A model generated the notes under the pieces. That model was given only the letters and a program-made list of their open reading frames with translations. It was not told the origin of the DNA and made no database searches. This document shows positions 15,110 to 64,000 of a stretch of 64,000 nucleotides of DNA, in pieces. Origin of the DNA: Haplodiscus bocki (Eukaryota). Position 1 is the stretch's first letter; every line of letters starts with the position of its first letter. A program made the position numbers and the translations under genes. The stretch is taken from NCBI GenBank assembly GCA_965655095.1, contig OZ296648.1:175336001-175400000 (forward strand). Direction: 5' to 3'.

Positions 15110-15394
15110 AAATTGCCATAGAATGTGAATGAAATATAAGAGTTTAAAAACGTATGAATATAGAGTTTTTTCGTGAAAAAACTTCGAAAAAAACCGAAAT
15201 TTGAAAAATTGGGAAAAAGCAGCAAGTTTGATTAAGAATGCGGATAAAATGCTAATATTTCTTAAATTGTCTGAGATTCTTTCGACTCTCTTTTTAAAAA
15301 TGGGGAAGATTGACCGATGTGATAGGGTTGGGTAAATTTTCCTTTAAAAAAGTTGGAAGGTGGAAATTGTCCCGGTAATAACCGGGTGTCTTGT
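15110..15394 (+). mobile_element. DINE-1/HINE-like element, type-1 3' end
   Basis: Ends cccggt-aata-accggg hairpin plus tgtcttgt. The preceding cctttaaaaaagttgg matches 35045. Confidence 0.6.
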
Positions 15395-16024
15395 AATGGT
15401 TAAATAGTACAATGGTTACAGTTACAATTTACAGTAACAATGGTTTAGTTGTTACAGTTATGACTTATAGTTTCTGTTCCCCGATGAATAAGGAACTAAA
15501 AATAGCGCCATTAGCTTGGATATACTTTTTACTGCATTTTTGTTTCTACGGATTTTTAACGAGGACTAACACTGATAGTTGATACCCTGGGCTAAGTTTT
15601 AGCCTCAGGGGTAGTTAACAGGAAGGCTTTTTGTTTTATGGCGTAACCTTTTCGATATTTTTTTCATTCTGATATGTCGACATTGCGACATATATAGTTG
15701 AAAGAAAGTGATTGCTTGAATGAAAATTTCACATTCCGAAAGATTGAAGCTTTTGATGCATGGATCATGAGCTATGAAAAGCTATTAAAAATGTATCTTA
15801 GCATTCCTCTCTCTCAACTTTTGCTATAAGTTGGTCTTCGCCAGTGCTAGAAAATGCAGCTAATTATTACACCGACCTTTTTTTTAAAATCTAAAAACTC
15901 CAATTTTGGTAAATTTTATAGGTTAAATGCTGGTGAAAACGTTTTTTAAAAGATCACAATGAAATGTCTACTTTTTCCCTATTTTTCCCCTGTAACGTTT
16001 TTTCAAGCATGCAATTGCAGTCTA

Positions 16025-16293
16025 TAACAAGCATGGCCAAGTACTCAAAAGCAGCAAAGCTCCCTTCTAGGAAATTTTTCGGTACTGTGAGTCCAAGAAA
16101 GTTTCGACCAAAATCGTGATACCCCTCTTATGCATATTTTTTATTTCGCTACCAGAAACATTCAGAAACACCAAAAGCGCCCCACTCACGATTTTTTCCG
16201 TGAGACAAAAGTTTTTATATCCCCTCTATGGTTTACCGAAATTTTCGCGCCCGACAGATGGGCAGCGCCGACTTTGAGCTGTTCTCACTTGTT
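16025..16293 (+). mobile_element. HINE-like element, type-2 3' end, carrying satellite units
   Basis: aaatttttcggtactgtgag...cgtgatacccctcttatgcata is the same unit as 39450-39520 and the reverse of 63770-63900. Ends gggcagcgccgactttgagctgttctcacttgtt. Confidence 0.6.
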
Positions 16294-17353
16294 GATGTCG
16301 AAGCTGAAAGAATTCAATATTATAAGGACATCATGCCTTCACCTTTTTCCCTAGCACTTGAAACTTCGAATTTTAAATGTAATAAAATTGTAAAGTTGCT
16401 CACTTCTTTTACATCTGCCACTGTTATTGTAACGTAAATGTAGTAAAGTAGAAGTTACATATAAAGTTCACGATTACAATACTAACCATTTTAACACTTG
16501 TGCATTATGTGCTTTTGAGTAAACTAGATTTTTTTGCAATTCATCGAATAAATCTAACAGTTTGTGCTGCTTTTTTCAACTCGTGAAAATGCACCATCAA
16601 ACTTTTTTTTAAATTTTTCGGTTTTTCTTGAAAGCAGACCAACTCGTCAGACTATTTTCAATGGTTTTGTTATTGTACCTTTCAAAGAAATACTGAGCTT
16701 GATTGCAACTGTTTATTCAACCGTAATGGCCTAACGTATTGTTTATTGACGAAAAGATTGCATCTATTTTAATTTTTAACTAAGTCGTTCAGTGAATCGT
16801 AAAACAATTAGTTAATCATGCCAAACTGGCTTTTCTCAAATTACTTCTGATTGTTTATAAGTATCGAAGCCGTACTGAACAAAGCGAAGACCTTACGACT
16901 GCATCCAACTTTTTTACAGAAAAGATTGCTGTATATTTTGTTCATTAGTGTTACTTTGTTGTTTAGTTTTGCAAATTAGTTTGAATTTTGTGCGCTCATG
17001 ATTTTGTCAATTGCTGAGTGCCAATTAGCTCATTTTACTCTCTGTTTTGCAGTTGGTGCTCGCCTGTTTCTCTTGCTAATCAAAGGTGGTGCTTTCTATG
17101 ATAACACTATGATATAATTATTTAAATTCAATTTATGACTTTATGGTTTATTCGATGAAACTTATAACGCCCATACAAAATCTTCCACCGAACAACATCC
17201 ACTTTTTATTCGTTGGGTGCAAGTATGCCTGTGGAATTACACTTCACTGTGCCGCAAGGTGAAAATTGACAACCGCGAAAGTTTGGCAGTACGAAAGATC
17301 CTCAATCGCGAAGATTCATTAGAATTGGTCGGAATTATCCAATTAAATTTCAG

Positions 17354-17850
17354 ACGAGCGATTAAAATTTCGGCGTAATGACAGGACTCCTCAGGTGACG
17401 GCTCAGCTTGTAAATTACGATGTCAGTGAATTGCCGGCCCGAATCTTCTCAACCCAATGTCAATAGCCGTGTTTCATTATTTCATTTTGAAATAGGCTGT
17501 TTTTGACACGGCTGTGTGTCGTCATCATTAATCTTAATTTTATCACTCCACCTGTCGGACTTGCTCCATATACAATGACATCAAGGTCATTACTGGCTCC
17601 AACCCGTGTCGTTGTGAGCACAACAAATTCTCTACACTCTCTTCGTTTTTTCGATGACCAAGTAGAGTTATCTATAGGAAATAGGAAAGGATGTCGCGTA
17701 TCCGCATCCCAGCATCAGGACTTTTTGAGTTTTTTAAGGATTATGAAATTTACGGTTACAAGACCTTTGCTACTGGGATACTTTGTAATTGGACGTTCGG
17801 TACTACGGCCGACTCGATGCTGTGTCAGTACAGCAATACTATATCGTTAT
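17354..17850 (+). pseudogene. Possible decayed ionotropic glutamate receptor M3/S2 fragment
   Basis: Across frames: ELPARIF, LFLTRL, FFDDQVELS (cf. NR1 YFRRQVELS), WTF..ADSM..Y. Stops present. Confidence 0.25.
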
Positions 17851-19266
17851 TATTAAAAATTTTTCTAGACCCACAATTTGAAACTTCTCAAATTCTGTTC
17901 AAGTATACACTACTCATGGTGTATGATGAATAACGAGAGTTTAAACAATTCCCATAAAAACGAATTGATCGAATATAACCATTCAAGTTTACATTCTGAT
18001 CAATCAGCGCGTTTTGTCTAGTGCAGAAATTAAACGTACAGATAATCATCGAAGTCATAAATCTGATAGGGCCGTACAGAGAAATCTTCAAAGCAAAAAT
18101 TCTATCAGATTGCAATGGTTTATTGTCGGAAAAACTTCGAACGAACATACAGAAAGATTGAAAATGCCAATCGAGGCGATTTTTGTTATACTCTTATGTT
18201 TTTGTTGTGACTTCGAATTTTAGGGAAGAAAAATTGATGTTGGAATGTTACACTGTCAAATTATAAATCAAAATTGTCACTGAAGATTGCCTCACTGAAA
18301 CTGTAAACAAAAAATAGACATAGTAAATTTACGCCTAAAAATTTGGAATTGCATGTTTTAACATTAGTTATAGCGCTCACTGACGGCAACTTGTCAATTT
18401 TTCAAAAGTGACTGAAATTCTGATTTTGTAAACATATTGCCGTCCTCCAGAGACAGCTTTACATGTATTAAGATAACAAAAAATGATGTCTTCTGAACCG
18501 TTAAAAATTCAAAGGGAGTGAAAACCCTCAGAGTTACGCCCCTTTCTGATTCCTGTTGGTTACCATCTGTCTTTATTATTTTAAGTGCTAAATTTGCCAT
18601 GTTAGTAAATTTTTGCTATTTACAGCGATAACGTAAAGCAAACGGTGTTGGTCGAAACTGTCAGTTTTATGGTTACTACCAACAACCAAAAGTCACACGT
18701 TATAATTACATGATAGGATTTTGATTGTTTACTTTTGATAAGTCAAGCAATTAGAGAAACCGGTATGGAATTAAAACAATATGTTTCGGTGTTCGTAACA
18801 TTATCTCTTGTTCTGAAAAAAAATAAGATAATATTTACAAAGCTTGTATGAATAAAATTATCGAACATTGTCTCAAACCTCCATAGTTTATAAAACGTAA
18901 TTCTTTTTCACAGCACTATTGTATCGTATTAGGACTGAACGCTGATTAACTTTAAAAGCTTCCTTGTTCATTGTAATTACTATATCTGTTAAATTCAAAA
19001 CAAATTAGTCCCGGTTTTCTTGTATTTTCACATGAATTTTGCTTTCGAATTTTTTGGATTTTCGCATTAGCTAATGCCATACTAAGTTTTAGGAAAACAG
19101 CATATGGCAGTTCTTTTTGACATATCGTTTCGAACAAAAATCGGCCAAATCTTGATTGTGATTTTTCGCCTCATATTTTTGACAATCAAAGAAAAATCAA
19201 TGAGTTAGTAGGGTCATTTTTCTTTTTTTTTCAGTGAACTTCGCTGATTTATATATAATGAGTTTC

Positions 19267-19430: not shown

Positions 19431-19649
19431 TATTTTTTACTTCATTGTTGCAATTTTGAGAATCGCTTTTTTTACCATCGAAAATATTAATTTCCCACGT
19501 AATCTTTCCATCGGAAATATTCAATTCATTAGCACAGTGCGCTGCGTTTCCCAGAAAATACCAATATCACGCAGACTTCGTGTCGGAGATTTGCTAGGGT
19601 GTTGTGTAGTTCATTTATGTGGTGTCACCGCGGTTAGGTAGGTAAATCG

Positions 19650-23460: not shown

Positions 23461-23469
23461 TTTGCTGAT

Positions 23470-25893: not shown

Positions 25894-25945
<52 letters not shown>

Positions 25946-26100: not shown

Positions 26101-26228
26101 TAAGCGTTCAACTGTTTTATATTCTATTATTACTCTTGCACAAGCAATTGTTCTAACACTATTAAATTTTTTTTCGATCCTTCCACAACGGACACAAGCC
26201 CCTAGATTTTTACCAAAAGGAAGGAAGA

Positions 26229-26294
26229 TGCTTAGGCTCGAACCTGGGACCGTGCGCGCTGCAGTTGAATGCTCTACTGACTGTGCCATTGTCG
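26229..26294 (-). pseudogene. tRNA-Cys(GCA)-derived cassette
   Basis: Reverse complement tggcacagtcagtagagcattcaactgcagcgcgcacggtcccaggttcgagcc matches tRNA-Cys TAGAGCATTTGACTGCAG...GGTCCCCGGTTC. Anticodon and acceptor stems are broken. Confidence 0.75.
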
Positions 26295-28759
26295 TTTGAG
26301 AATCTTTGTTTTTACCTAAAATATCAAGGGAATGAAATATTATAGCGTTTCTTACTTGTATATAAATGTACTTGTAAAATTAACTGCGTTTCTCTTGTTA
26401 TCAGTAGTATTCGTAGTATTGTTCCCCTTTTCAAAATCAGTGATGATTAGTCGATTTGTTCCCTAGTATTGCCTTGGCGCAAGTTTTGCGAAGCACAGCT
26501 TCCCTTCTGTGTTCAGAATTCAGGTTTGCGGTCATCGATTCTTTTGGTTGACTTGGCCAGGATGAAGTACCAAGGCTCTGAACTTGTTGGCGAAAAATAT
26601 ATTCGGAGGTGTTCAACGCAGTTTGTTTTAAGGTATGATGGGTGCCTTTTCCGTTATTGCACTCAGCAGACTAATCACCCTGTTAGTACTGCCATCTATG
26701 TATTCTCTTAGCTACTTGCACAGTACCATCGGAAAAGATTCCGACTGTATTTTGTGAAAACAGTTTCAGACTCTTCCTAGTTTTCACTAATACTCAAAAA
26801 CAACGGTAAGTAGTAAGTCATAGTGGGAGCAAAAGTTTCTGAGAACTTTGTGTTATTTACAAATGATGTTTGGTTGAAAACTAGGAATGTTATTACGGTA
26901 GTTAGCAAGTTTGATAATTACATGAGGTAAAATAGGAATTACATGACAACTTTTGTTTTTTTTTTCAAGCGTCTCAAACTCGAGCATTGTTTTTTACATT
27001 TCTTTTACTTCGAAAGATACTGCGAAACGTTTGTTCTTATAACTTTTCTCAAAAAATGTTTGTGGGGAAGCCCAAAAGCGCTAAAGTTCTGTCCGAAAGT
27101 AATCTATCAATTTAGAGTCCAAGTTTTTTTCTGGCAGTACTGTACTGACGCCTATGCATTCAGCGAATTCATTTTTTGCGAGTTAGTAGACATCAACCGC
27201 ATTTCACAAATTTCTAGTAATTTTCAAGAAGCTGGCTGCTTAGTGAAGCTACTCGAAGCAGATAATTATCTTTTATTCAATGAAATTTGCTTAGCTCAGT
27301 AGGACTGGGGGAAATAATGGGAAGACCCCAAAGCGTTTTACGCTTTTTACTAAGTGAATAAAACAGACATATGAAGGCCACCCTTATAACATCTAATATG
27401 AGAAACGTCTTAGGCTAATTAAGGTAAATTCGCTAATTTTTTGGTTGACTTTAGACAGTTTTTGATTTTGCATTTGTAACTACTGCTAAGTGTGTTATAT
27501 AATACTTCTCGCCAAACTTGTACCAAAAGACTCCCCTAAACCTCTTGAAGCCACTGATACCTCTTGACATCAAAATTATGTTTTTCTACAAAAATGGAGG
27601 ATATAAGTTTGCAAATTTCAAAGTTCCATGTAAATACATGTAATTTCAGTATATAACTTTTTTAAATTAGATTTTCATTCCGAATTTCGCCGTAACTCTG
27701 GAATGGTCAGGGTAAAACTTGCAGGAAAAAATTTTTTAGGTCGATCAAAAATTGAAAAAAAAAACGCGCACTTCAGCTAAATTTGTCCAAAAATGGCTAT
27801 TCGTAACTTTTGCATTATTCGATAGAAGTTCCAAATAGAAACGGTTGTAAACTAATTAAATTTCTAATAATCTGTTAGTGAGGACATTTTTGGAAATTCG
27901 TGATGGTTTTGATGATGTTAGATTTTGATATTGGTGCTTTGCGGCATTTGTTTTTGTTTTTGCTGTAGACTAACTTAGAGCGGCGAGTTTCTTCCAGTTC
28001 TTTTGTTTGGACAGTTGCCTCGTCTAAAAGGTGCATTGATTGCTATTTTCTCCAGCTTTTCAGTGAAATTACCGTGCAGGCTACAAGAAATCCAACGTCC
28101 TTTGAAAATGTTATGTGAAAGAATTACGGGAAAATCGTTCAACGTGATGGAACTTTGTAATTTGTTCAGCTGGTATAAGGAAAACGACGAACTTAGCGGC
28201 AACACAATCTAATAAAGTCAATAATCACTAGATGGCGCCTTATAGGAAATGATGATTTGGACTTTTGGCGTTGTGAAGTATACACCCAGTTTATTTAAGA
28301 ATTTTTCTGAGAACCTGTTGTTCAATTTTGGACCCCAATGTTCTTAATTTTGTTCGTATTTCAGCATCGAAATGATCTTGTTTTGCTATGTTTTGGCCTC
28401 GAACATTTCTTAATTAAGTTAATAAAATAGCTAACTCCTACATGAAAAAAAGTTTGATTATGCGAAATGCCTGAAAAAATGAGCATGTCATACATGTATG
28501 AGAAGTCTTGCGCTTCCATTTTACGTTAATAAGCAATGAGAATTATTGAAACACGTGGCAGCAAGGATCAGTAAGATTGAAATAACAAGTTTATGCATTG
28601 AAAGTTTTATTTCTGCTTTGATGTTAATTAAGCTGGCGAAGCGCCAGCTTACTACCGTCGACTCGAGTTTTCTATATCGTATCGTTCACAACTGGCACAA
28701 GATGATGGTGGAATGAATCTAGCAAAAGTCAGGTAACATTTGGGCCAGTTTATTTATGA

Positions 28760-30014: not shown

Positions 30015-30500
30015 AATTACACTTACGCAAACAATTGTATTCTCACAGGCTTCTGATTTCTTTTTTCCTGATCCGCTCATGACTCGCGCAAAATTTTCAC
30101 CTGAGAGGGGAAAGAGTGTCCTAGGCTGGAACCTGGGAACGTTGACGCCGCAGTCGCATGCTTTACTGACTGTGCCCGTGTCGGTCGAGAATCTATATAT
30201 TTTTTCAAAATGTCAGGCAGAACAAGTTTTTGGCGTTTCTTACACGAATATACATGTAGAAGAACCAACTGTCTTTCTGTACACTTGTTATCAGTAGGAT
30301 TCGTAGTGTGATGGCCCCTTCTAAAATGAGTGAAATTTAGTCTGTTTTTCACCTGTATTTCGTTGAAGCAAGTGTTGTGAAGCCCAGCCTGGTGTCTGCG
30401 TTGCTTATGTTTCACAGTGTTATATCATAGGCTTCCGTTTTTCGATCCGTCACAACTCGCATTTGTTACTAGATTCTAACTATCCCAAGTTTTGTGCGTG
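30015..30500 (-). repeat. tRNA-Cys-containing ~400-bp repeat unit
   Basis: Colinear with 26130-26520 on both sides of the tRNA cassette (30122-30178), including ttgttatcagtag.attcgtagt. Confidence 0.8.
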
Positions 30501-31739
30501 TGTTCTAGCCTTCGTGCAAAAGAAGACAAAACGTGCGATTCTTTTTTTCCTGGTAAAACGCTTTTCTAGGATTGTAACGATGCACTTTTCTTCGTGGTCC
30601 ACCAACTTCGGTATTTTTTTTTGCGTACGCTCTGTTTACTTGGAACGCTGATTGAAACAAAAGGATTCTGAAGCCACTGACAGTGGGTTGGATTCGATGT
30701 ATGGGCTTTATCGCATCTAAAATTATTCTGGGAACGTCCAAAGATTTCTGCAGCCGTAGCCGGCTGATATTTGTTCCCGGATTCTGTTTTTTTTTTCATT
30801 TTGTGCCAGAAGCAATATCAAACTTTACTTTTTTTGAGAAAACTTCGGACCTTCGGTCAAAAATTGTTTGTCCGCTACCAGTATGGTTTTTTAACTGATC
30901 CACAGGTAGCGGGTTCAGGTCTCAGCATGAACATCGAATTCAACTCCGATATAGGAATTCTTCGCGCCATGCGGCCGGCACCGACTTATGCCGTTCCCAG
31001 TTTCCTAGTGTTTTGAAGTGCGGCGTCTATTGGAGTGCAAAGTAATGCAACTCGGAGCACAAAAGTAGTGAGATATTGTAGATTAACTGAATTTTTTGGT
31101 AATTTCGAATAGGCTTGGATGGTTTTTCAATGCTCAGTTGGTCAGAATATCTATTACCTGGTTTGCTCCAGAAATTTGCCCTTATGCTGTTCTCAGGAGG
31201 CTTCTTGCTTCTAGGATAAACCAATGGGGTACAGAAATACGAGAATGGCTATATAGAGCTAGATGTGTCAAAGCTGTTCCTCAGGAAATTTTTTTCGGTT
31301 TAACTTAGAAACAGGAAATAGTTAATTTTCGACTCATGCTCGGCAGCTTTCTGTTTTTGCTTTTCAGCTATAATTGCATTGAAAATCTACGGGGGGACAT
31401 ATCTGCGAATTATCCGTGAAGTATGAAGCTTTTTGATTGAAAATGGTCGTTTTCAGCTTCCTAGTTCCTAAATTTATGTAGTTTTACAATTTTTGCATGA
31501 TTTTGCTTTTTTGATCAGCGATTCAAATTTTTGATTCCGAATACAGCTAATTGGAGAGTATGGAACCTGGAGAACTTTCACCCTTTTTGGATAACTCAAT
31601 CCAAAATGGTTTTGTGTTAGTGTAAGCCTAGAATTCCGATAGTGTATGATTTTCCATAGTTTTCTTCTTGCTCCTCAGAACAGTTTTTGACCTTTTAATG
31701 CATCCGAAGCACTTCAAGTTCAGGTTCTACTGCTACGTG

Positions 31740-31860
31740 TTCTTACACAACTGGCTAAGTTTCCGAGATTTCGGCCCAATAGTGGGCCATTATCATAAGG
31801 AACTTGGGGCCTTCTGCGCTCCAGTCGATTGCTCTACTAACTGTTCCATTGCAGCTTTAG
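31740..31860 (-). repeat. Decayed tRNA-Cys cassette copy
   Basis: cagtcgattgctctactaactgttccattg matches cagttgaatgctctactgactgtgccattg at 26262. Confidence 0.65.
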
Positions 31861-31999
31861 ATCGAGTGTTTTCCTTTTCAGCATTAGTGGGTACAGCTTT
31901 GAGTTTTGCTCAGCAATATTGGGTACTTCGATTCATCTTGCAAGCTTGGTGATTTTTCATCGGCCGTCACAACTTTTGGTTGTTTTTTTTAATCTCTGT

Positions 32000-34300: not shown

Positions 34301-34359
34301 AGCGAATTCCTACACACTGTAGAAACGTCCAAATTTTGAGGTAAGATTTGGGAAAGGAA

Positions 34360-35097
34360 CGTGTCCTGGTGGTCTAGAGGGTAGGACTGAGGGCGGTTAG
34401 GCCGAATTTTTTTTGAGTTCCTGACCATATTTATAATATGGATGAAAAATCATCTACTCCAGTTTCGTGTTTTTTTTACCCGTTGTTTGCCACTTGCGAT
34501 CTTGTTTAACGATGTTGGCCGTTTTCCCACACGTTCGCAAAAATATTCGTGTGGGCACATAGAATGCAGTTTTGACCACCCTGCCGAAAGTTTTTCTCAA
34601 AGTCCCGAAGTTTTTCATTCAAGGTCCGTAAATGACAAAAAATTTCCCCGTAATGTTGGTCTGGGCGTTTAGAAAGCTGTTTCAGCAACCCTGCCATAAA
34701 CTCTCCGCCAAATGTCCGCGCCCGTTCAGCTCAAAATCCGAAAATAATCATGAAAATCCCTATTTTTCTAAAATTATTCATTTTTCCTCAAAAAATTCCT
34801 CTGGACTTGTAGAATGCAGTTTTGACAACCCTGGCAAGTTTTTTGGTTTCGTTTTGAAAACATCGTTTTTCAAAATCGCTGAATTTGGAATTTTTACTGT
34901 AGAATTCGTATCAATTGATTTTTTTTCTTGAAAATGTCTTTTCCTTTTTAATTGTGGGATTATTTTGCAAAAGATCAGAAAATTTTTAAATATCGAAATA
35001 TTACAAAATTAGAAGAAAGTTTTTTCAAAGAAAAATAGTGCCATCCTTTTAAAAGTTGGTGGGAGGAAAATTTGCCGGTGCTAGCCGGCCGTCTTGT
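34360..35097 (+). mobile_element. HINE-like element: tRNA-Glu-like 5' half, three tandem units, type-1 end
   Basis: tcctggtggtctagagggtaggact resembles tRNA-Glu TCCCTGGTGGTCTAGTGGTTAGGATT. agaatgcagttttgac.accctg-like units at 34561, 34671 and 34811. Ends gccggtgctagccggccgtcttgt. Confidence 0.6.
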
Positions 35098-39180: not shown

Positions 39181-39309
39181 AAATCCCGTTACAAATCCAT
39201 ACCTTGTTATTTTTCACCGCATATGTAATATGCAAGAAAAATTATTCATTCAGTGGGGTCGTTCTTCTTTTTTTTCAGACCAAAATTGCCAACTTTTTAT
39301 TCAGAAATA

Positions 39310-42048: not shown

Positions 42049-44027
42049 GTTAGTTACGTTTTTAATTTTTAAATGAAATTCTATCAACAAAAAGTTTGTG
42101 TCTTCTGGAAGTCAACTGTTTCCCATGGCCTCCAATCTGTTAAAATTTGACCTGAATGGTCACTAGAAAAGGTTAGTTTGAAAGAGTTTCTGTTTATGTC
42201 GTTCTCGGACAGATAATATAAATGAAAATTCAAATGAAATAAATTCATTATGGTGAATTTTTTGCCTGATAGTAATCAAATATTATGCCAGGTATCATAC
42301 AGCTTTCAGTTTTTTGCTTGTTACTTGTTCAAGTATCTGAATTCGTTCAACCGCAAAACTGTCTATTGTCATGTATAAATCAAATTTTACAAGGCCATCT
42401 GCTTTTGATAAAATCACTGCTTTGCGTCACCTCCAAACCGAATGTGATTATTTATCATAGCATTTATCTCAGCCATTCCATGGAAATCGATAAATATTCC
42501 CTGAGGGAAAATAAACCGTGGACTAATGGGCGTGGCCTCTTTGCGAGTCATTGGCTATCTACTGGTGCAATCAAAAGGCTGAATTCAATTGGGTTTCACA
42601 ATACAGACAAGTCGAATCCAGAAAATGTAAATTACCATTCGTTCAGCCGTTCTTTTGTGCCGTTCATCTTTTTGCAACCTAACAACCTTTGTGAAAAATC
42701 CGGCCTCTGAGGTGCCGTATTTCATGTTCAAGCTCATTCAACTGTTTTAGCAGTTTTCGTGATTTCACCGGAAAGCTCGGTCACTCCGGTTTCTTGCTTC
42801 TTGTTCCCTTATCATATACGGCGCAATCCTTGGAAAGGCGATGGCTACACACTTTAACCTTGGTCGTGCAAAACAAACAGTGTACCAAAGTTCCGTTGAA
42901 GCTATTATTGCTTCATTTGTACCCATATGAGAAATTTCCTAGTTCTAAGTCGGCGAAAGATTGGGAATTTTGCTGTTTCGATGATAGCTGAAAATATTCT
43001 TTGTCAGATTCGGGAAAATGGTCTCAAACCATTGTCGATCAACACCCCCCCCCCCCATTTTCTCAGAGACTACCAACCGCATAAGTATGAAATTTGACAC
43101 ACATATACTAGAAGCTATGCGGAACCCAAGGAACCCGGTCCGAACCCCATCCGACTCCAATGTCCCGAGCAACAATTAGCACTTTAGTGGCTATGAATCG
43201 GCTAATCTTAGCAGGAATAGCAATTTTGCATATAACTGTAAGTAGTATCGATGTATTAACCTTCGTAGGACGCTTTCGGCAGGATTGATATCATTTTACC
43301 TCGGTCGATGGTCTTATGTGAACAAACGGTTTTCGATGATGTAATGCTTTAGGACTTCGGACTGATCTTTTTCCTGAGTATTTGGCACAAGAGCATTTCT
43401 AGACCTCTTGTGTGCATGTACACGCATGACGAGGATCTGTTGCATTTAAAAACATTCATTTATTAAAATTTTTTTGTGACCTGATTATAGATTTTCAAAA
43501 TTCGCTAGAAATATGAAAAGAAGGACGCGATATCAAGTGAATAAACGTTCACCTAATGATATAAAAAATATCACGTATGCGAGAATGTAATGGCGTTGTC
43601 ATAAAATACGCCGTATTTAAACGCGCAAGTATGTGTAAACGATAAACTTAATTGAGGAGGAAGTAGAAAGTACAACTTAATTAGAGAGCTGGGAGCAAGT
43701 TGAGTCTTGCAGAGACATACTACTTGGCTGGAAGAGTGTCTTGTCGCTAGCTCCGTTAGCTACAAGCTGAGTTGGAGATGATGGACTTACAACTCCGGGC
43801 TTTGTCATTTTGTTGAAGTCGGAGCTTCAGTAGTTGTTACTTGTATGGAATGTACTTAGCTGAATTGTGGATTTTCGTTGTATTGGGTCTATCGCTTGTA
43901 TTTATTTAGATTTTTTGCGCCATATCATTTATAACTACTCATTATAATTCAATTTAAAATAATTATTCAACGCAAACGTTTTTAAAATAGATTTTGTCAA
44001 TAAGTTCGTTTTTCACGAAATTATTAC

Positions 44028-44355
44028 ACATTGGCCGTAGAATGCGACTGATTTAGTGAAATTTCTCAAAACGTTCGGGTTTTTTTTCGAAAAAAAGACT
44101 TTAGTGTTTTCAAAAATGCTAAAGGTGCCATTTTGGTTGTCGAAGGCGTGTCGCGTGTCGAATGGTAATATTTCCAGAAAATGTTTTTTCCGCCTTTTTC
44201 ATGAGGATTTTTTTGCAAAAATTCAGATTTTTTTCAAAATTGGAATGATTAGAAAAAATAATGAGTGTTTTTCGAAGAAAATACGTTTTCATCTTTATAA
44301 AAGCCTTCCTTACGAGGAGGTGCAAAAATATGCCAGTGGTAGCCGGCCGTTTTGT
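44028..44355 (+). mobile_element. HINE-like element, type-1 end
   Basis: Ends aaaaatatgccagtggtagccggccgttttgt. Its start cattggccgtagaatgcgactg resembles 15110. Confidence 0.6.
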
Positions 44356-45507
44356 CAACGTATTCGAGTTGATCATCTATCTTCACGAGAACTAATCGAA
44401 TAATTGTCGTCTGTTTTCTCTGTTTGTCTAGTTGGACCGAATGAGAAGCTTAGAGAGAAAACGTGCGCGGCTAGATAGAATGAGAAGATTCTTATCCACC
44501 TAAGAAGAACGTCTGTGGTAAAGTTAGATTCTTGCCAAATTCTGTCCCTCAAAATCTAAAAAATATATTTCATCAGAGTTTAAGCCGTTGTAAATGTAAT
44601 ATAAAATTGAGCTTTATTAAATCGATTCTTCCCGAAGTTTCTTTTCCCCGGTTGCTTGAGCCCGACAGAACCTACTTCAGGAAATGGGATAATTTGGTCA
44701 CTAAAGCTATGTCGAAGATTTATAGAAAGAATTTCATCTGCTCTCGAGTGAATGCTTCTGGTTTTTTGAGAGACGGGATTTTTATTGTTACTTGAAGGAG
44801 GTATGAATTGAAAAGGGGGATCTAGAATGTAATTTTAAATCAACTCTCGAAAGTTCCACATGCTCAAATTCATGATTTATCCGCAAGAAAAAAATAGTGA
44901 CGTTTTCGCTTTCTTTGTTTATCCGGATCGAAAGCTCTTTCAGTCTTTCTCTTATATTGGTGTCTGTTTGCATTGAGGAGCGTGAGACCTCTTATTGGCT
45001 GTGAATGTCTACGGTGATGACATGCATAAGCGACTAATGAATAAGTTATAACAACTGGAATTTGGTTTTGAGATCTTGTTGATGTTATGTACGGTGCCGA
45101 GACTGGTTTTGATTTTCCTGGTATGCTGGTTTGTTGATTGTTGGTAATCTTGTGAATAATTGAAAATTGGGAATAATTTATCACAAATTGAACGAAGGAG
45201 AGAGCAGGATGTCAATTAGTCTGACCTGAGCTGTTGTATGAAGCAAAGTTTGCATTCATTAATCCTTTTTTGGGCAAATGGTATTTTTTGGAGTTTTCTC
45301 ATCTTCACAATGATTTGGAACTGATGCATAGCAGAACAAAATACAATATAGCCTTCATCATTTTTTGTAAAGCTGTTACTACGTCTTAGTCGTTGATTTA
45401 CTTTCAATAAAAAGCCGACTATTACAAAGGCTAGTTTTATTTCACTGCCTAAACGTCCAAAATGTTTTACCAAAATTTAACGACCAACCCAAAATGACTA
45501 GTACTCT

Positions 45508-45570
45508 AGAAGGACCCGTTAGTATAAAAGGTAGGACAAAAGATTTGGGTTCGAGACTACGCAAGTCCAA
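45508..45570 (+). pseudogene. tRNA-like cassette related to 50255
   Basis: tagaaggaccc...ggtaggacaaaa...gggttcgagact. Confidence 0.6.
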
Positions 45571-50054: not shown

Positions 50055-50254
50055 GTTGACTAAGCTGCTTTTTCTTGACCTTCAATCTCTATTACAATTC
50101 ACATCTCAAATCGCCTGATTGGTAGTCGGCGTTTTTTAAAAGAGAAAGTGACCCACTATTACAATGATTTTTTAAATATATTTGTTTTTAAGACTCGAAA
50201 TCGACGAAATTCTACAAAAATTCTGAACTCCCAACGCAAAGTGATTGGTACATT

Positions 50255-50645
50255 AGAAGGCCCCGGTGGCCTAAAGGGTAGGACAAAAAGGTCCGTACGG
50301 CATACATCCGGGTTCGAGACTCGATAGGTCCCAAAAGTTTTTGGGGAAAAACGTTCATTTTTGGATGCTCTCTGTATTTCTATGGTTTTATCACCCCCTG
50401 ATTTTTCTGCTGTCCCGGCCTTCGCTATACAGGGTAAGACAAAAAGTTTGTGAGCCATAGATAGGGCCTCGGGACTAGGTAAGTCCTTTTTTTCGAAAAA
50501 AGCGTCTAGTTTTAGTTTTTCAACCCCCGTCCCAAAGTTTACGATAAACCTATGGATCTTCAAACTTAAGGATGAACAAAAGGGGATCCCCATGGATATT
50601 TTCAGCCGTACGGGCGGCGCGGACTTTGGACGTTCGCGGGTTGTT
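50255..50645 (+). mobile_element. HINE-like element with two tandem tRNA-like cassettes, type-2 end
   Basis: ggccccggtggcctaaagggtaggaca...gggttcgagac (50259-50332) and a second decayed cassette (~50413-50485). Ends gggcggcgcggactttggacgttcgcgggttgtt. Confidence 0.6.
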
Positions 50646-51434
50646 TTCTTTTATGCAAGGATCTTCATTCGGCGCTTTGTGACGGAAGGAGTTTGACTGT
50701 TACAAAAGGTTTGGGTTTCAAGGGTGTAGATGAAGTGTTCAATCAAATTGGTTAAAGATCACAACCCCACCCCGCGCAAAATTTCAATGGGGTGGATATA
50801 ATAAACTAATTGAGCAAAAGATCTGCGATACATAAATACCAGGGGTTGGATTCTTTTGTTAATATTTCTATCAATTTATGCTATTTAATTGTTCATAGAA
50901 ACAAAAAAATAGTCGTGTTCTATATGTTAATGAACCCGTCAAAATGTACTCTAGGAAATTTAACATTATTACAAGGTGATATTTAAGGTGTTTAATTGTT
51001 CGTTTTTGCCGTTGGGGAATCAGAAATACGAGTTAATCTTCTTCACTGACTGGAAAATGCATATGAGAGACTTCGTTCGTTTCATCGCGCAGTAAGTTTG
51101 TGCCGTATTTACATTTGCCTGAAATTTGAAATTTTTTAGTAGCGTGCAAACCAATTGCTTAATTCTGAGAAATGTGGAAGTTCCCTCGTTTCCTATCATC
51201 TCTCAGAAATATGTCAATAAAGTCAATCCAAAGATGAAAAATGTTTAAATATTGTTTTATTCGAAAAAAATCCAAAATCTGAAATACGGAATTACTTTTG
51301 GAATACTGTTCAGAATCGGAAGCGATGTGTTCGGTACCGCGACGCTACATCGTCCTTTACATCCACTGCGCAGGCGGTATGTGTGTCCTCGCTACGCCTG
51401 GAGATACCTACGTTTCGCTTTTGTATCAATTTAA

Positions 51435-52190
51435 TATTTACACTTGCGCAAACCAAGTTTTTGTCACGGGCTTCTGCGGAATTTTCCGATCCTTTTACAA
51501 GTCGTATTCATGCCTACATTCTAATATAACCTAGATTTTGTTCATGTTTTCTCGCTCAGTTGCAGAAACTGGTTCACGTGGCCTATTTTCCAGCGTGTGC
51601 GCTTGTTTGTAAGGCGAATTAACTGCTATAGTTGTTCGCACTTGTTTAAAACTTTATGAGAATTTATTGAAATAAATAACTTTCCGTTCAATTGTTTAAT
51701 TAGTAATTTTGGTAGTACCGTGGTTCCTTTAACAATCCGTTAGTTGTTCGATTTGTTCACTATATTCCGTTGCCGCAATTGCTGCGAAGCACAGCTTCGT
51801 CTCTGTGTTAAATAAAGTTCATGTCTCACTGCGTNNNNNNNNNNNNNNNNNNNNNNNNNNNNNNNNNNNNNNNNNNNNNNNNNNNNNNNNNNNNNNNNNN
51901 NNNNNNNNNNNNNNNNNNNNNNNNNNNNNNNNNNNNNNNNNNNNNNNNNNNNNNNNNNNNNNNNNNNNNNNNNNNNNNNNNNNNNNNNNNNNNCTTTGAA
52001 CTGTCATATTAAATCTCATTACACTTGCGCAAGCAAAGGCGTCTGCTGGCTTTTTTTCGATCCGTTCACAACTCGCATTTGGACTTGGATTTCGATCAGA
52101 GAAGGAAGTGTCCCAGGCACCAACTTATGACCCTTATCGCCGTAGTTTCATGCTCTAGTGACCGTGCATTGCCGCTTAAGAATCGGTATT
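51435..52190 (-). repeat. Tandem copies of the tRNA-Cys unit spanning the gap
   Basis: acacttgcgcaa at 51440 and 52021, gcgaagcacagctt at 51784 (also 26488), and a decayed tRNA cassette at 52112-52170. Confidence 0.65.
51835..51993. other. Assembly gap (159 N)
   Basis: Run of N. Confidence 1.
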
Positions 52191-52699
52191 TTGATTTTAA
52201 ATATAAAGTGATGTGGCCGTCTTGCGTAGCACAGCGAAGTACATGCAAAGAGTTGTGAATTTGATCCAACTAATTTTGATTGAAGTATTGGGTACTAGAA
52301 GCCTTCTTATTTTACTCTTAGATGCAAACCCCCCTTCCTATTTTTCAAAAAAAGTGACTACCGATGCCAAATTTGTTCAGAATGCCTGATTATTGCGTTC
52401 CAAAAAATCTTTTTAGAAAGCAAGCACGGATGAATTTTAGTGATACCCTTTGTACATATTCCAATTTTTATGAAAAAATGGCGAGAACTAGTGAGTTTTC
52501 CAGGCAATGTATAAAGTACCACAAAGGCCTTCTTGAAAATTTTGATCTGTGAGACAATATTCTCTCGAGAAAAATGCTATTCTAATTTGTTCAAGTACAA
52601 ATGGTTCCTCTCATGAATATTTTGAGCTCTCCACAGGTTTGGGTCGTTGTTGAAGTTCCTAAGAATATCAGTGTGAAAAGTTTCATAAAGCCACTTTCC

Positions 52700-56959: not shown

Positions 56960-57640
56960 TTTGACTGGCATGTGGTTGACTTTGGGTGGTTCGGAAAAGT
57001 CCTGCTGTACCTTGACTTGCTTAGCTTGGCATTAGCCCAACAAGCATTAGCATCTTCAAAATTAATCATTAGCCTGCTTCGAAAAAATCTGGTTCCTCTC
57101 AGACACAATAACAAGCTCCGCGAGAGAGTGAAAGATATTTTGGTTTTTAGTCATGCTGATTTGACACTTTGAAGAGCTCTTTAGGTACAGAAGTTCAATT
57201 AGTTGCTGGTTGAATGCTGTAGTCAGCCCTCAAAGCAACTACAAATAGCGGCGTGGAGGAAGAGTTTTCATTGTCGATATTTAACTCATGGTATCCATTT
57301 AGTTTTCGGTTCAATGTTTCGTGTAGATGTCTCCAGACTTTCCACGTGACTCTTTGAGACGGCTAGAGGGTTGAAATCTGTGACTTCGTTCTGACGTCTT
57401 GACACGAAGCTTCCCATGGAGCACGTTGAGCCTGGCGGGAAAAAAGTTGTGCGCCAAAAAATATCGTGATAATACTACGCTTGACTTTGTCATTCATTAG
57501 CCGGGGATTTGTTTTTATTTTCCGCCCATATTTTCATTATATGGAAAGAAAATCATTCATTCGACGTGCAGGTTCTTTTTACATAAACTTTGCCAATTAC
57601 ACGATGGAGTTTATAAGAACCTCGAAGATTCGAGAAGGAA
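56960..57640 (+). pseudogene. Decayed, apparently intronless tyrosine-kinase-like domain
   Basis: FGWFGKVLL (Gly loop, ~56980-57007), VEICDF (~57370-57390) about 130 codons later, then KLPMEHVEPG (LPxxWxAPE-like) and PY. Multiple stops and frameshifts. Confidence 0.5.
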
Positions 57641-61329: not shown

Positions 61330-61860
61330 GGAAAGCAGCAAAGGAGACCATCATAGTAGGAGTGAGAGCGCGCAAAGCAAGAAAAATTTGATTTTTTTTG
61401 TTTAAAATGTCCTTTTGCATTGGATTTTTGTGCGAATTTTTGGGAAAAAAAATTGTCGACACGCAGCAAAGTTGCGTGGCAGTACAAGGCGGAATATGTG
61501 GACCATCACTGTAGCGGTGAGAGCGCGCAAATAATATAAAAGTGTAAATCCTGGGACATTTTGATTTCACTCCGCAGGAAAACGGATTAAGAGTTGAGGT
61601 TATGGTTATTCCAAAGAACGGTTATTCCAAAGAACGGATCTTTTCTGTTAACTCCCTCCCCCCCACACACACACTCATTTAATCCCCCCCCCCCCACGCC
61701 ATAATGGATATGTGAATTTTAGCCTATCAGAGACGAGATCGCTTCTGCGTGGGGGGAGTTAAATTTTGAGCTTCTACTGTGGAAGGGGGAGTTAACAGAA
61801 AAGATCCCAAAGAACTTTCCGAAGTCTTATCCACTTCGGGCGGCTATGTTTTGTTATGAT
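61330..61860 (+). repeat. Copy of the 13130-13850 repeat family, interrupted by a MITE
   Basis: gaccatca...gtgagagcgcgcaaa occurs twice (~61347, ~61501). aggaaaacgga, gttattccaaa and aagtcttatcca...ggctatgtttt match 13400-13490. Confidence 0.7.
61636..61807. mobile_element. 172-bp MITE with 21-bp perfect TIRs and 8-bp TSD (Merlin-like or Mutator-like termini)
   Basis: TIR ggatcttttctgttaactccc / gggagttaacagaaaagatcc. TSD caaagaac at 61628-61635 and 61808-61815. Confidence 0.92.
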
Positions 61861-63227
61861 ATTGTGACGCATGCAGCTAGACTTCTCACTTGAATAAACT
61901 TCAAGAGCTTTGAAATTTACTGACTGTTTTGCTGCATGTACGTCATCGCCTTTTGGTGCTTTTGAATAAGACCAGGCGGTTCTTTTGATCAACAACCAGA
62001 TCAGTATTTTGTGCATTCAGACGTGCGAGTAAAGACAGATGAGTCATTGAAGTCTGTCTCGTTGAAGTGAAATCGCAATTACACTCAAACTGTATTGATG
62101 CAATTCAACAAAATGTACTGCACTTTACGCCAAAACTTGATGAAATATATACTTGGTTCGATTTTGAACATTTCCAAATGATCCAGACCAGATCATGTTT
62201 CTTTTATCCCCCCAAACGCATCGGGGGTAATTGAAAATCAGATTTCAAGTGCCGCGAAACTATATCGACATAACTGTAAAATGAACGCTAAATTATACCG
62301 ACCTCCTAGAAAGTGTCTCATAGGAAAAAAATGCAATCAAATTTCTGTTTCAATCAATAGCGATACAAAATCCACTTAGAAGGACTTTAGACGAAAAGAT
62401 AATCTAATCAATGGGTGTTCTAATTACCCCAGTGCCTATTGAAAACGCCCAAATGAAACAAATAATAAAATAAATTCAGATTACTGTAGTATAAGCATTC
62501 AGAGGCAGAGGGAAAGGTTGAAATTTGCTGCACCTGGCGGTATTAGAGAAAGATGGTCATCCACTCCAGTGCAATGCGATGTGCAATTTCAATTTTACAG
62601 TTGAATGATTCTTCTTACTCAACGGAGCTAACTTTCGTGTCTAATTATTACTTAGTTATTGGTTTTTGATTTTTAATTGACAACTGTGTCTCTCAGTTTA
62701 AAATGGCGAGTTCTTGCAACTTCTCAGAGTGTGGCATGAGTCACTCATGGCCCCTGAAACGTGCATTTATTTTTTGACAACTTATTTGCATGTAGAGAAA
62801 ACAGAAGTTTTTGATAGGTTTTGTTGTAGATGTTTGTTTCATGAGAATCTTTGTTGTTGGCATTTTCGAAAATTTATCTACCGAAGAAATTGAAATGAAT
62901 TGCATTTAGGTTGTGGTATTTCAGTTTTTATTAATTGGTATTCCTAATTATCGATAATTAGGCTAGTTTGCTTTTATCAGAGAAACAATTTTGATGGCAG
63001 TGCGTTATCATTTTACAAAATCGGCTGTTGTCTCATTATTAAAATCGGCGGTTTTGTCCTGCTCCCGTAATGACTATTAAGCAGACTGGTCCATGGACAA
63101 CAGTTGACTTTAATGGGGTCTATTGATGAAAATAGTACCTATTAGCTGCAAACCTGGTAGGCAGTATTGCTATCTTTCAATTGATTCAATGTTTGAATTA
63201 GCTGTATTTTGTATTTCATGGTTTCAG

Positions 63228-63394
63228 ACAGAAGCAGCTCATAGAAGATGCCATAATCCGGAATGACTTTTTGAAGAAGCTGGACCACACTCAGATAGCT
63301 GACATTGTGGACTGTATGGCACCCAGAATGACCAGGGCCCATGACCTTATCATCAAAGAAGGTGAAGTAGGTGACGAAGTATACGTCATTGAAG
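63228..63394 (+). CDS. PRKG1: PKG coding exon 2 (start of cNMP-binding domain A), missed by the ORF track
   Basis: Acceptor tttcag|A, phase 2. Translation (R)QKQLIEDAIIRNDFLKKLDHTQIADIVDCMAPRMTRAHDLIIKEGEVGDEVYVIE(G) aligns with PKG-I KDLIKEAILDNDFMKNL...IVDCM...IIKEGDVG..VYV. Donor G|gttagt at 63395. Confidence 0.95.
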
Positions 63395-63604
63395 GTTAGT
63401 CACGCTCTAACAACGCAATGATTCAACATTATGCCTACTCTCAAAGGTACATTTAAAGAGAGCGCAAGCTAGCCCCTCTTGAATTTTTCGGGCCAATTTA
63501 TGCTCAAAGTGCCGAAATCATGTTAAATTTTACAATTTTTCTTGCTAAGCCTCGAACTATTTGAAAAATTTCTAAATCCGCCCTTGCCTATTTGAAGTAA
63601 TATA

Positions 63605-64000
63605 ACAAGACGACCGGCTAGCACCGGCATATTTTTCGCAGGAATACAAATATTTTGATCAACATATTTGCCGACAGTTAAAAACGAGACTACTGTTTAA
63701 AATCTGGTTTGCGAAAGTTTTCTACAAACATCAATTCCACCACTGATTTCTATATTCTATGCAAAAGAGGGGGGTATCACTTTTCGTTCAAAATTTTTTG
63801 TCTCACAGTACCGAAAAATTTTGTTGGGGATAACTTCGGTGAATCAGAAAATTTCGGGTAGCGAAAAATTTTATGCATAAGAAGGGGATATCACTAAACT
63901 CCGTTGAAAAATCTTTGTCTCACAGTGCCGATAAAATTCGTAGGAGAACCCTTCTGTGTTTCGAAAGAATTCTGGTATCGAAAATTTTCAAGCAAAGGAG
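63605..64000 (-). mobile_element. HINE-like element with a 117-bp satellite array running off the window
   Basis: Starts acaagacgaccggctagcaccggcata (reverse of the type-1 end). gtctcacagt recurs at 63800 and 63917. Confidence 0.75.

What the first reader, a model, noticed from the sequence alone, without database searches (positions are those of the whole stretch)
15110..64000. Modular DINE/HINE-like elements that swap cargo, including tRNA-derived Pol III cassettes and satellites
Seen: at least eight elements end in one of two conserved hairpin-plus-CTTGT(T)-like termini. Type 1 ends lie at 15394, 35097, 39665, 44355 and 63605 (reversed), and type 2 ends at 16293, ~31003 (decayed) and 50645. 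Their interiors differ: a 117-bp satellite (16060, 39400, 63780), a different ~110-140-bp unit (34561-34830), tRNA-like cassettes (34362, 39312, 50259, 50413), or a tRNA-Cys unit upstream (30015). The same satellite is found with both end types. Known: Drosophila DINE-1 and bivalve HINEs end in a stem-loop plus CTTGTT and seed tandem repeats. Inference: a rolling-circle vehicle family that recombines ends and spreads tRNA-derived promoters. It would look like a SINE at one end and a Helentron at the other.
Basis: partly seen in the sequence, partly recalled or inferred. Interest (0 to 1): 0.72.

Follow-up and report, generated by a model that had tools for sequence, protein, structure and literature searches.

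The report
Rolling-circle hitchhiker elements carrying tRNA relics
The window is peppered with short, non-coding passengers of rolling-circle (Helentron-type) transposons, a known kind of element; their one unusual feature is that several families carry decayed copies of tRNA genes next to the usual satellite-like repeats.

Summary
The type-1 end (11-12-nt inverted repeat, GC hairpin, CTTGT(T)) occurs 4 times in the window against 0 expected, and at least 8,422 times in this 1.5-Gb animal genome. The type-2 end occurs at least 442 times. All elements have the layout of non-autonomous Helentron/HLE2 elements (HINE, DINE-1-like). That layout is a 5' subterminal repeat complementary to a 3' repeat, then a 3' stem-loop, T-rich insertion sites without duplication, and central tandem repeats.

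I resolve at least five families:
- T1a: tRNA relic plus a 117-bp array.
- T1b: other repeats.
- T2a: 117-bp units.
- T2b: two tRNA-like units.
- T3: palindromic repeats and a reversed tRNA-Cys-like relic.

Cargo really is shared across end types. The tRNA-like pieces are not tRNA genes, since ARAGORN and Rfam find none. The T1a module is nevertheless a decayed tRNA-Arg(TCG) copy at a fixed internal position.

Not supported:
- a SINE-like end;
- the assignment of the unit at 30015 to the end at ~31003;
- the piece at 34362 as cargo.

Not shown: Pol III activity. I did not find an autonomous partner with these ends. The assembly gap touches none of the elements. This scan had already noted similar elements elsewhere in the same genome.

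The parts
14975..15394 (+). Old T1-type HINE (T1c). The 5' repeat is TATTTTTCGCCCC. The 3' hairpin is CCCGGT-AATA-ACCGGG followed by TGTCTTGT.
   Evidence: (D3). The hairpin keeps its pairing through a G:C to C:G swap relative to T1a/T1b.
15903..16293 (+). T2a HINE. Its 5' end is decayed. It holds two 117-bp-like units, the 3' repeat AGCGCCGACT, the hairpin AGCTG-TTCT-CA(G)CT and a TGTT tail.
   Evidence: (442 genomic ends).
19156..19230 (+). Solitary 5' fragment of T1a.
26115..26513 (+). T3 HINE-like element. It has a palindromic repeat (CTTGCGCAAG type) near both ends, a reversed tRNA-Cys-like relic at about 26233-26300, and the 3' hairpin CACAG-N8-CTGTG followed by TT.
   Evidence: D2, D6, D8; at least 4,079 first-look candidates; matches bounded at 26114-26513.
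30015..30402 (+). Second T3 copy.
30955..31003 (+). Possible decayed T2-like 3' end. Only the terminus is similar.
   Evidence: z 5.3 for the terminal 60 nt; the interior is not significant.
31793..31886 (+). T3 fragment (tRNA-like part).
   Evidence: (D2).
34355..34412 (+). Unassigned tRNA-like 5' half followed by a T run. It abuts the T1b element but lies outside it.
   Evidence: It shares 21 of 23 nt with the start of T2b unit 1. Other T1b copies begin at 34418.
34418..35098 (+). T1b HINE. Its first ~8 nt are lost or mutated. The interior holds 110-140-bp repeats, and the 3' end is identical in type to T1a.
   Evidence: D3, D4; at least 3,302 candidates.
39204..39666 (+). Complete T1a HINE: 5' repeat, tRNA-Arg-derived relic (about 39308-39384), one 117-bp unit, 3' region, hairpin and CTTGTT.
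   Evidence: (other copies diverge exactly before 39207 and after 39666/39667).
43910..44355 (+). Old T1b-like HINE (T1d). The 5' repeat is ATTTTTTGCGCC and the 3' repeat is GGTGCAAAAATA. The hairpin is decayed.
   Evidence: (66-67% identity to T1b).
45465..45541 (+). T2b fragment, including the start of a tRNA-like unit.
   Evidence: (D9).
50123..50646 (+). T2b HINE. The 5' repeat is TAGTCGGCG. It holds two tRNA-like units (about 50259-50335 and 50410-50490), each followed by a T run, and a T2-type 3' end.
   Evidence: (at least 651 candidates; matches bounded at 50123 to about 50646 and running through both units).
51692..51809 (+). 3' part of a T3 copy. It ends 25 nt before the assembly gap.
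   Evidence: (D6).
51835..51993 (.). Assembly gap (N). It is not part of any element and was not filled.
   Evidence: Separate T3 copies lie on either side.
52018..52211 (+). 5' part of another T3 copy. It begins 24 nt after the gap.
57512..57598 (+). Solitary 5' fragment of T1b.
63604..64000 (-). T1a HINE in reverse orientation, with at least 3 units of 117 bp. It runs off the end of the window.
   Evidence: (I1, I2, D5).

Best explanation
The elements are several related families of non-autonomous Helentron/HLE2-type rolling-circle transposons (HINEs, DINE-1-like). Each has a short repeat 0-4 nt from its 5' end that is complementary to a repeat near the 3' end. A GC-rich stem-loop follows that 3' repeat, then a T-rich tail (CTTGT(T), or TGTGTT in T3).

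Inferred mechanism: a RepHel transposase supplied in trans recognises these ends and nicks at the T-rich border. It moves the element through a single-stranded or circular intermediate into T-rich sites without duplicating the target. Head-to-tail arrays arise either from concatemers or from re-insertion at an element's own 3' border. Interiors are free cargo: a 117-bp satellite-like unit that expands from 1 to more than 11 copies, other 110-140-bp repeats, and captured tRNA gene copies with their downstream T run, now decayed. Families with different ends share cargo and families with the same ends differ in cargo. The interiors were therefore exchanged or re-captured, most likely by read-through of a 3' end into an adjacent element or by recombination between elements.

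Shown here: the architecture, copy numbers, sharp borders, empty sites, tandem junctions, the tRNA origin of the T1a module, and module sharing. Inferred: the enzymology, the exchange route and the identity of the transposase.
For: Abundance and sharp ends:
- 8,422 genomic hits for the T1 end and 442 for the T2a end, with 0 hits in the reversed-pattern controls.
- Similarity stops right after CTTGTT in 30 of 30 T1 loci.
- Contigs of other copies diverge before 39207 and after 39666/39667.

Architecture:
- T1a consists of a ~190-bp 5' region, a variable array and a ~150-bp 3' region.
- The 5' and 3' repeats are complementary and differ between families in matching ways: TTTTTCG/CGAAAAA (T1a), TTTTCCG/CGGAAAA (T1b), TTTTTGC/GCAAAAA (T1d), AGTCGGCGCT/AGCGCCGACT (T2a), CTTGCGCAAG (T3).
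- The 3' hairpins fold as expected.

Insertion sites:
- A T1a copy (L014) and a T2a copy (L047) sit in the T run of T3 copies. Three uninterrupted T3 paralogues show no target duplication.

Tandem insertion:
- There are 20 exact T1-to-T1a junctions, 18 of them with CTTGT abutting TATTTTTCGCC directly. They include four consecutive junctions at C7:69,075,496-69,080,467.

Cargo sharing:
- The 117-bp unit is shared by T1a and T2a (z 20.7).
- The tRNA-like module is shared by T1a and T2b (z 8.2).
- The 5' ends of T1a and T1b are homologous (z 14.7) although the interiors are unrelated.

tRNA origin:
- The T1a module consensus aligns end to end with this genome's tRNA-Arg(TCG) gene (z 6.8, 0 of 1000 shuffles).
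- A covariance model built from four real tRNA-Arg genes hits the module full length (model positions 1-73) in six T1a copies, 109-191 nt from the 5' end. The best hit is 24 bits with E 1.9e-4 in 555 kb.

Transposase supply:
- Helentron-type proteins exist in this genome. One frame encodes OTU, Rep, PIF1 helicase and AP endonuclease.

The layout matches the published definitions of HINEs (PMC4067079) and of HLE2 elements (PMC11417382).
Against: - No autonomous element with T1, T2 or T3 ends was found. The one Helentron family whose 3' end I could map ends differently (...CTCTCCGAGTGCCTTTTT at L073:5411).
- None of 15 RepHel loci contains these ends within the element.
- None of the 100 listed exact T1 ends on C1 lies within 10 kb of a listed RepHel hit.
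- The exact border is ambiguous by 1-4 nt. The TTRT in front of the 5' repeat and the T after CTTGT may belong to the element or to the target.
- The empty-site evidence rests on two insertions in ~78%-identical paralogues.
- The exchange route is inferred. Exact junctions between different end types gave 0 hits.
- The contig data showed no empty allele.
Confidence: 0.85

Rival explanations
1. The tRNA-like units are working Pol III genes or promoters that the elements spread.
For: T2b unit 1 keeps an A-box-like TGGCCTAAAGGG and a B-box-like GGTTCGAGACT about 43 nt apart, followed by a T5 run. The T1a relic is followed by a T run. Another HINE family in this genome carries units that ARAGORN still calls tRNA (L104).
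Against: No window unit is called by ARAGORN or by Rfam's tRNA model, even at E up to 10 on 1.1 kb. The T1a relic has a 5-nt deletion in the D-arm (A-box) region and mispaired stems. The T3 relic is in reverse orientation, which argues against a required direction. No RNA run is available.
Confidence: 0.15
2. The shared interiors were never swapped. T1 and T2 families descend from one ancestral element, and only the ends were replaced or diverged while tracking different transposases. Alternatively, each family captured the same genomic satellite and tRNA locus independently.
For: T1 and T2 both end in CTTGTT and have the same overall layout. Exact junctions between different end types were not found. 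HINE ends are known to diverge together with their partner (PMC4067079).
Against: Apart from CTTGTT, the T1 and T2 ends show no alignable similarity. The 117-bp units, by contrast, are ~82% identical, so the interior would have to be better conserved than the functional ends. T1a combines both modules, whereas T2a and T2b each carry one, which fits a mosaic better than a simple tree.
Confidence: 0.2
3. The elements are tRNA-derived SINEs or composites of SINE and satellite, spread by reverse transcription.
For: tRNA-related sequence with box-like motifs is present in T1a, T2b and T3.
Against: The relic is internal (109-191 nt from the 5' end in T1a) or reversed (T3). Elements begin with an inverted repeat and end in a hairpin plus CTTGTT. 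They have no A-rich or simple-repeat tail and no target duplication.
Confidence: 0.02
4. The elements are cut-and-paste MITEs.
For: They are short, non-coding, abundant and contain inverted repeats.
Against: The ends are asymmetric. The 3' repeat is followed by 25-30 nt of hairpin and tail that have no counterpart at the 5' end. There is no target duplication at the two empty sites, and head-to-tail junctions are precise.
Confidence: 0.03

Closest known systems
HINEs of the mite Metaseiulus, Culex and Drosophila (DINE-1), as defined by Thomas, Vadnagara and Pritham 2014 (PMC4067079)
   Same: Subterminal inverted repeats a few nt from the 5' end and upstream of a 3' palindrome. T-rich or TT insertion sites without duplication. 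A variable number of T at the borders. Central tandem repeats. No coding capacity. High copy number. T3 even has palindromic repeats, as the mite families do.
   Different: The partner Helentron with matching ends has not been identified here. The interiors include decayed tRNA gene copies, which that paper does not mention (the word tRNA does not occur in its text).
Cg_HINE elements of the Pacific oyster, which carry Cg170-like satellite repeats (PMC7492417)
   Same: Short satellite-like arrays lie between conserved left and right flanks that carry a subterminal repeat and a palindrome. Related monomers occur in several element families with different flanks. Insertion is into TT without duplication.
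   Different: The sequences are different. The microsatellite block described in the oyster left flank was not seen here. The tRNA-derived modules are not reported there.
HLE2 (Helentron/Helitron2) terminal structure as used by HELIANO (PMC11417382)
   Same: Inverted repeats of 12-16 nt at both ends, a stem-loop after the right repeat, and insertion between T and T.
   Different: HLE2 families are defined together with a RepHel protein lineage, which is missing for these families. The genome holds both AP-endonuclease and GIY-YIG RepHel types, and either could be the driver.
Non-autonomous elements of other classes that embed small-RNA-gene-like sequence, such as the Helenus and Ajax LTR elements (PMC10886601; abstract only)
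   Same: A non-SINE, non-autonomous transposon carries a tRNA-like sequence as a standing part of the family.
   Different: The transposition class and the position of the tRNA-like part are different. I did not read that paper in full.

Membership tests
HINE / non-autonomous HLE2 (Helentron-type) | A short inverted repeat near the 5' end, complementary to a repeat near the 3' end (about 11-16 nt) | tested here: met
   T1a TATTTTTCGCC / GGCGAAAAATA. T1b TATTTTCCGMCC / GGGCGGAAAATA. T2a (T)AGTCGGCGCT / AGCGCCGACT. T3 CTTGCGCAAG-type at both ends.
HINE / non-autonomous HLE2 (Helentron-type) | [quoted passage not shown] | tested here: met
   A 5-6-bp GC stem is predicted in T1a, T1b, T1c, T2a and T3. 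It is conserved in thousands of copies, with one compensated pair in T1c.
HINE / non-autonomous HLE2 (Helentron-type) | Insertion into T-rich or T-T sites without target-site duplication | tested here: met
   Two insertions (L014, L047) lie in the T run of T3 copies, with three uninterrupted paralogues and no duplication. Only two sites were available, and the paralogues are ~78% identical.
HINE / non-autonomous HLE2 (Helentron-type) | Central tandem repeats of variable copy number; no coding capacity | tested here: met
   There are 1 to more than 11 units of 116-123 bp. Element length is 466-1,370 bp (median 943) among copies complete within 1.5 kb.
HINE / non-autonomous HLE2 (Helentron-type) | Ends shared with an autonomous Helentron in the same genome | tested here: inconclusive
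   A Helentron protein (OTU, Rep, PIF1, AP endonuclease) is present, but the 3' end of that family differs. Fifteen RepHel loci lack these ends.
Canonical Helitron (HLE1) | 5' TC, 3' hairpin plus CTRR, insertion between A and T | tested here: not met
   The ends are TATT... and ...CTTGT(T), and the flanks are T-rich.
tRNA-derived SINE | A tRNA-related head with A and B boxes at the 5' end, a 3' tail, and flanking duplications | tested here: not met
   The relic is internal or reversed. There is no tail and no duplication.
tRNA gene | A cloverleaf recognised by ARAGORN or by Rfam RF00005 | tested here: not met
   No calls in the window at default or 95% thresholds, and no RF00005 hit at E up to 10 on the eight excised pieces. 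Only a tRNA-Arg-specific model detects the T1a relic, and only in other copies.
MITE (cut-and-paste) | Terminal inverted repeats at the very ends, plus a target-site duplication | tested here: not met
   The 3' repeat is followed by 25-30 nt of hairpin and tail. No duplication is seen.

The most novel reading that the evidence does not exclude
In this genome, Helentron-type passengers act as regular vehicles for tRNA genes. They capture tRNA loci at the DNA level, together with the downstream terminator, and amplify them singly or as arrays. They also pass them between families with different ends. This would feed the genome's very large load of tRNA-like sequence and perhaps its long tandem tRNA arrays. 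Some units, such as T2b unit 1 or the near-intact units of the L104 family, might still recruit Pol III or TFIIIC and so affect chromatin or the element's own mobilisation.
Probability: 0.2. Interest if true: 0.65.

Novelty: new variant of a known kind. Interest (0 to 1): 0.42.

Why it matters
HINEs are already known as seeds of satellite DNA. If they also capture and multiply tRNA genes as a matter of course, they become a DNA-level route, alongside SINE retroposition, by which Pol III-type sequence spreads through an animal genome. They would also be a possible source of tandem tRNA arrays and of TFIIIC-type boundary sites.

In practical terms, these families amount to tens of thousands of copies. 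They must be annotated as Helentron-type elements rather than as SINEs, MITEs or satellites. They also explain at least one assembly gap that is flanked by repeats in this window.

Tried and rejected
- tRNA detection: ARAGORN (default, -ps, -ps85) and Rfam (gathering threshold; E up to 10 on the whole window and on eight excised pieces) found no tRNA at any claimed cassette. At -ps75 ARAGORN 'tRNAs' in the window, which is noise.
- TRF found no 117-bp array in the window.
Three 10-kb regions and twelve 3.5-kb RepHel loci held no T1, T2 or T3 ends. One Helentron family's 3' end was mapped and is different. After no further loci could be cut out.
- A first attempt to fetch an earlier finding used the wrong coordinates (L103). 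The second attempt (L104) found it.
- Exact junctions between different end types (T2a to T1a, T1 to T2) gave 0 hits.
- Read laying gave contigs only. There was no empty allele and no RNA evidence. Its summed depths are not copy numbers, so I did not use them as such.
- Single decayed units (T2b units 1 and 2, 45479, and the window's own 39312) are not individually significant against real tRNAs. Only the T1a consensus and better-preserved copies are.
- The T3 relic scored only z 2.1 against the available real tRNAs (Lys, Arg, Thr, Ile). Its likeness to tRNA-Cys rests on my reading of the sequence against a remembered tRNA-Cys, so it is a lead, not a test.
- My regular expression for the T2a 5' flank also caught the reverse complement of the 3' repeat, so I discarded that profile.
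- The protein atlas was busy.

Full report
**Setting.** The window is C1:175,336,001-175,400,000 of a 1.5-Gb animal genome with at least 12 large chromosomes. Its G+C content is about 37%. The organism's name is withheld; the sequencing runs list it only as 'organism A'.

**Are the ends real?** Yes.
- The type-1 end with up to 3 mismatches hits the window 4 times, against 0 in 100 shuffles. A fifth, diverged copy at 15394 belongs to the same repeat family (D3).
- Genome-wide, the 25-mer with up to 2 mismatches occurs 8,422 times, and its reversed control 0 times.
- In 30 sampled loci, similarity ends immediately after CTTGTT.
- The type-2 end of 16293 occurs 442 times against 0 in the control and is equally sharp.

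**Anatomy of T1a.**
- Mutual BLAST of 1.5 kb upstream of 30 T1 ends gives a three-part element. It has a ~150-bp single-copy 3' region, an array of ~117-bp units of very variable length, and a ~190-bp 5' region, beyond which similarity stops.
- TRF finds arrays of 116-123-bp units with up to 11 copies and higher-order periods.
- Elements complete within 1.5 kb are 466-1,370 bp long.
- The 5' border is (TTRT)TATTTTTCGCCGCATATG.
- The 5' repeat TATTTTTCGCC is the reverse complement of GGCGAAAAATA. That 3' repeat sits directly upstream of the hairpin GCCGGT-GCTA-GCCGGC, which is followed by CGTCTTGT(T).
- The window copy 39204-39666 is complete, with one unit. The reversed copy 63604-64000 has at least 3 units and runs off the window.

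**Other families.**
- T1b (34418-35098; at least 3,302 first-look candidates, 67-75% identity) has a 5' end homologous to that of T1a (z 14.7) and the same 3' end. Its interior is unrelated and contains 110-140-bp repeats.
- The inverted repeats of T1b differ from those of T1a at matching positions (TTTTCCG/CGGAAAA against TTTTTCG/CGAAAAA). The old copy 43910-44355 shows a third matched state (TTTTTGC/GCAAAAA).
- The old copy 14975-15394 keeps the hairpin through a G:C to C:G swap.
- T2a (about 15903-16293) starts with (T)TAGTCGGCGCT and ends with AGCGCCGACT-TT, a short hairpin and TGTT. Its interior holds about two 117-bp-like units.
- T2b (50123-50646; at least 651 candidates) has the same 5' repeat and a homologous 3' end. 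Genomic copies align from 50123 to about 50646, straight through both tRNA-like units.
- T3 (26115-26513, 30015-30402, and pieces at 31793, 51692 and 52018; at least 4,079 candidates at 77-80% identity) has a palindromic CTTGCGCAAG-type repeat near both ends, as the mite HINEs do. It ends in CACAG-N8-CTGTG followed by TT, and holds a reversed tRNA-Cys-like relic.
- In all, about 15 pieces of these families lie in the window.

**Insertion behaviour.**
- By chance, one sampled T1a copy (L014) and one T2a copy (L047) sit in the T run of T3 elements. Three uninterrupted T3 copies (L004, window 26 kb, window 30 kb) serve as paralogous empty sites. The flanks rejoin within the T run and nothing is duplicated.
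- Genome-wide there are 20 exact T1-to-T1a head-to-tail junctions. In 18 of them CTTGT abuts TATTTTTCGCC directly. Four consecutive junctions lie 1.05-2.24 kb apart on C7. Such tandem arrays are expected from rolling-circle concatemers or from re-insertion at the element's own T-rich 3' border.
- The exact border remains ambiguous by 1-4 nt. The four bases before the 5' repeat are T, T, A/G/T, T in 95-100% of copies, and the base after CTTGT is T in all sampled copies. That sample was partly chosen with a pattern ending in TT.
- Contigs of other copies diverge before 39207 and after 39666 or 39667.

**Are the cassettes tRNA-derived?**
- They are not tRNA genes. ARAGORN and Rfam call none, even on 1.1 kb of excised pieces at E up to 10.
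- The T1a family consensus of the module aligns end to end with a real tRNA-Arg(TCG) gene of this genome (z 6.8, 0 of 1000 shuffles). It aligns less well with tRNA-Thr, Lys and Ile.
- A covariance model built from four real tRNA-Arg genes matches the module over model positions 1-73 in six T1a copies. Each match lies 109-191 nt from the 5' end. The best is 24 bits with E 1.9e-4 in 555 kb.
- In these alignments the acceptor and T arms pair, the D arm has a 5-nt deletion, and a T run follows.
- The B-box-like GGTTCGRG lies 145-168 nt from the 5' repeat in 11 of 17 copies.
- The T2b units are homologous to the T1a module (z 8.2) and to each other (z 8.9). The fragments at 45479 and 34362 match T2b unit 1 (z 14.5 and 9.0).
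- The 34362 fragment lies just outside the T1b consensus, so it is not T1b cargo.
- The relic is thus a standing, fixed-position part of T1a and T2b. Together with its terminator-like T run, this points to capture of a tRNA locus as DNA rather than to a SINE insertion.
- Pol III competence is not shown, and for T1a it is doubtful.

**Mosaic structure.**
- T1a carries both the tRNA relic and the 117-bp array. T2a carries the 117-bp units only (about 82% identical to those of T1a, z 20.7). T2b carries tRNA-like units only, and T1b carries neither.
- Outside CTTGTT, the T1 and T2 ends do not align. Cargo is therefore shared across end types, and end types are shared across cargo.
- I infer exchange by read-through of a 3' end into an adjacent element, or by recombination. 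One T2a-to-T1a juxtaposition exists (L044), but exact-pattern searches for junctions between different end types returned none. The route remains an inference.

**Autonomous partner.**
- The genome holds at least 147 matches to the Helitron Rep domain, many in open frames of 2,000-2,780 codons.
- One frame encodes OTU, Rep, PIF1 helicase and AP endonuclease, the classical Helentron layout. Two others end in a GIY-YIG nuclease.
- The 3' end of the AP-endonuclease family was mapped from where some 25 copies at 92-99% identity stop matching (L073:5411). It has its own palindrome and ends in GCCTTTTT, not in a T1, T2 or T3 end.
- No sampled RepHel locus holds the HINE ends within the element.

**Assembly gap.** The gap at 51835-51993 lies between the complete 3' end of one T3 copy (51809) and the 5' start of another (52018). 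None of the claimed elements spans it, and no conclusion here depends on continuity across it. I did not try to fill it.

**Earlier notes of this scan.** Other windows of the same genome were already flagged for HINE-like elements with tRNA-like repeats and co-varying ends. I fetched one of them (L104). It carries a 142-bp array whose units ARAGORN still calls tRNA (5 of about 10 units), and the tRNA-Arg model scores them at 20-42 bits. It is a different family from those described here, but it shows that tRNA cargo recurs in this genome's HINEs.

**Verdict.** This is a well-supported annotation of a known kind of element, non-autonomous Helentron/HLE2 families that seed satellite-like arrays. 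One less familiar feature is well supported for T1a and supported by homology for T2b: captured tRNA genes as family-level cargo, shared between families with different ends. The HINE papers I could search do not mention tRNA cargo, though that is no proof of novelty.

Noticed in passing
G000 C3:133.75-134.31 Mb; C9:18.63-18.98 Mb; C1:134.82-135.01 Mb; C23:0.10-0.31 Mb: RepHel (Helitron-like) open frames of 1,800-2,780 codons recur about every 15 kb in long clusters, on both strands. Two sampled members end in a GIY-YIG nuclease. They look like tandem arrays of large autonomous rolling-circle elements.
   Followed up: partly
L073 (G000 C1:147,369,000-147,379,000): A young Helentron family whose open frame encodes OTU, Rep, PIF1 helicase and AP endonuclease. 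About 25 copies are 92-99% identical over the 3' untranslated part, and the 3' end lies at L073:5411. A reversed T1-like HINE 3' region lies 1.3 kb downstream (L073:6723-6871).
   Followed up: partly
G000 C7:23.68-23.78 Mb, C4:107.93-108.14 Mb, C11:32.11-32.18 Mb: Long tandem arrays of tRNA-Arg(TCG), tRNA-Lys(TTT) and tRNA-Thr(TGT) genes at 1.4-1.7-kb spacing. One member of the Lys array reads as Ile(TAT). The first-look count of tRNA-like candidates in the genome is about 138,000.
   Followed up: no
window 12756-12970 and 57843-58057; also 7940-7983: Another dispersed repeat (215 nt, 84% identical) containing TTGACGTCATCAG. It is unrelated to the HINE families.
   Followed up: no
window 25896-25944: A perfect (CA)24.5 microsatellite about 170 bp upstream of the T3 copy at 26115.
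   Followed up: no
window 53764-53844: A weak mir-184-like hairpin (23.5 bits, E 1.1), far below Rfam's threshold of 54.1 bits. It is probably chance.
   Followed up: no
L104 (G000 C1:157,487,300-157,489,099): A separate HINE-like element with about 10 units of 142 bp. Each unit holds a reverse-strand tRNA-like gene (ARAGORN: Phe, anticodon AAA) and a 14-bp minisatellite.
   Followed up: partly
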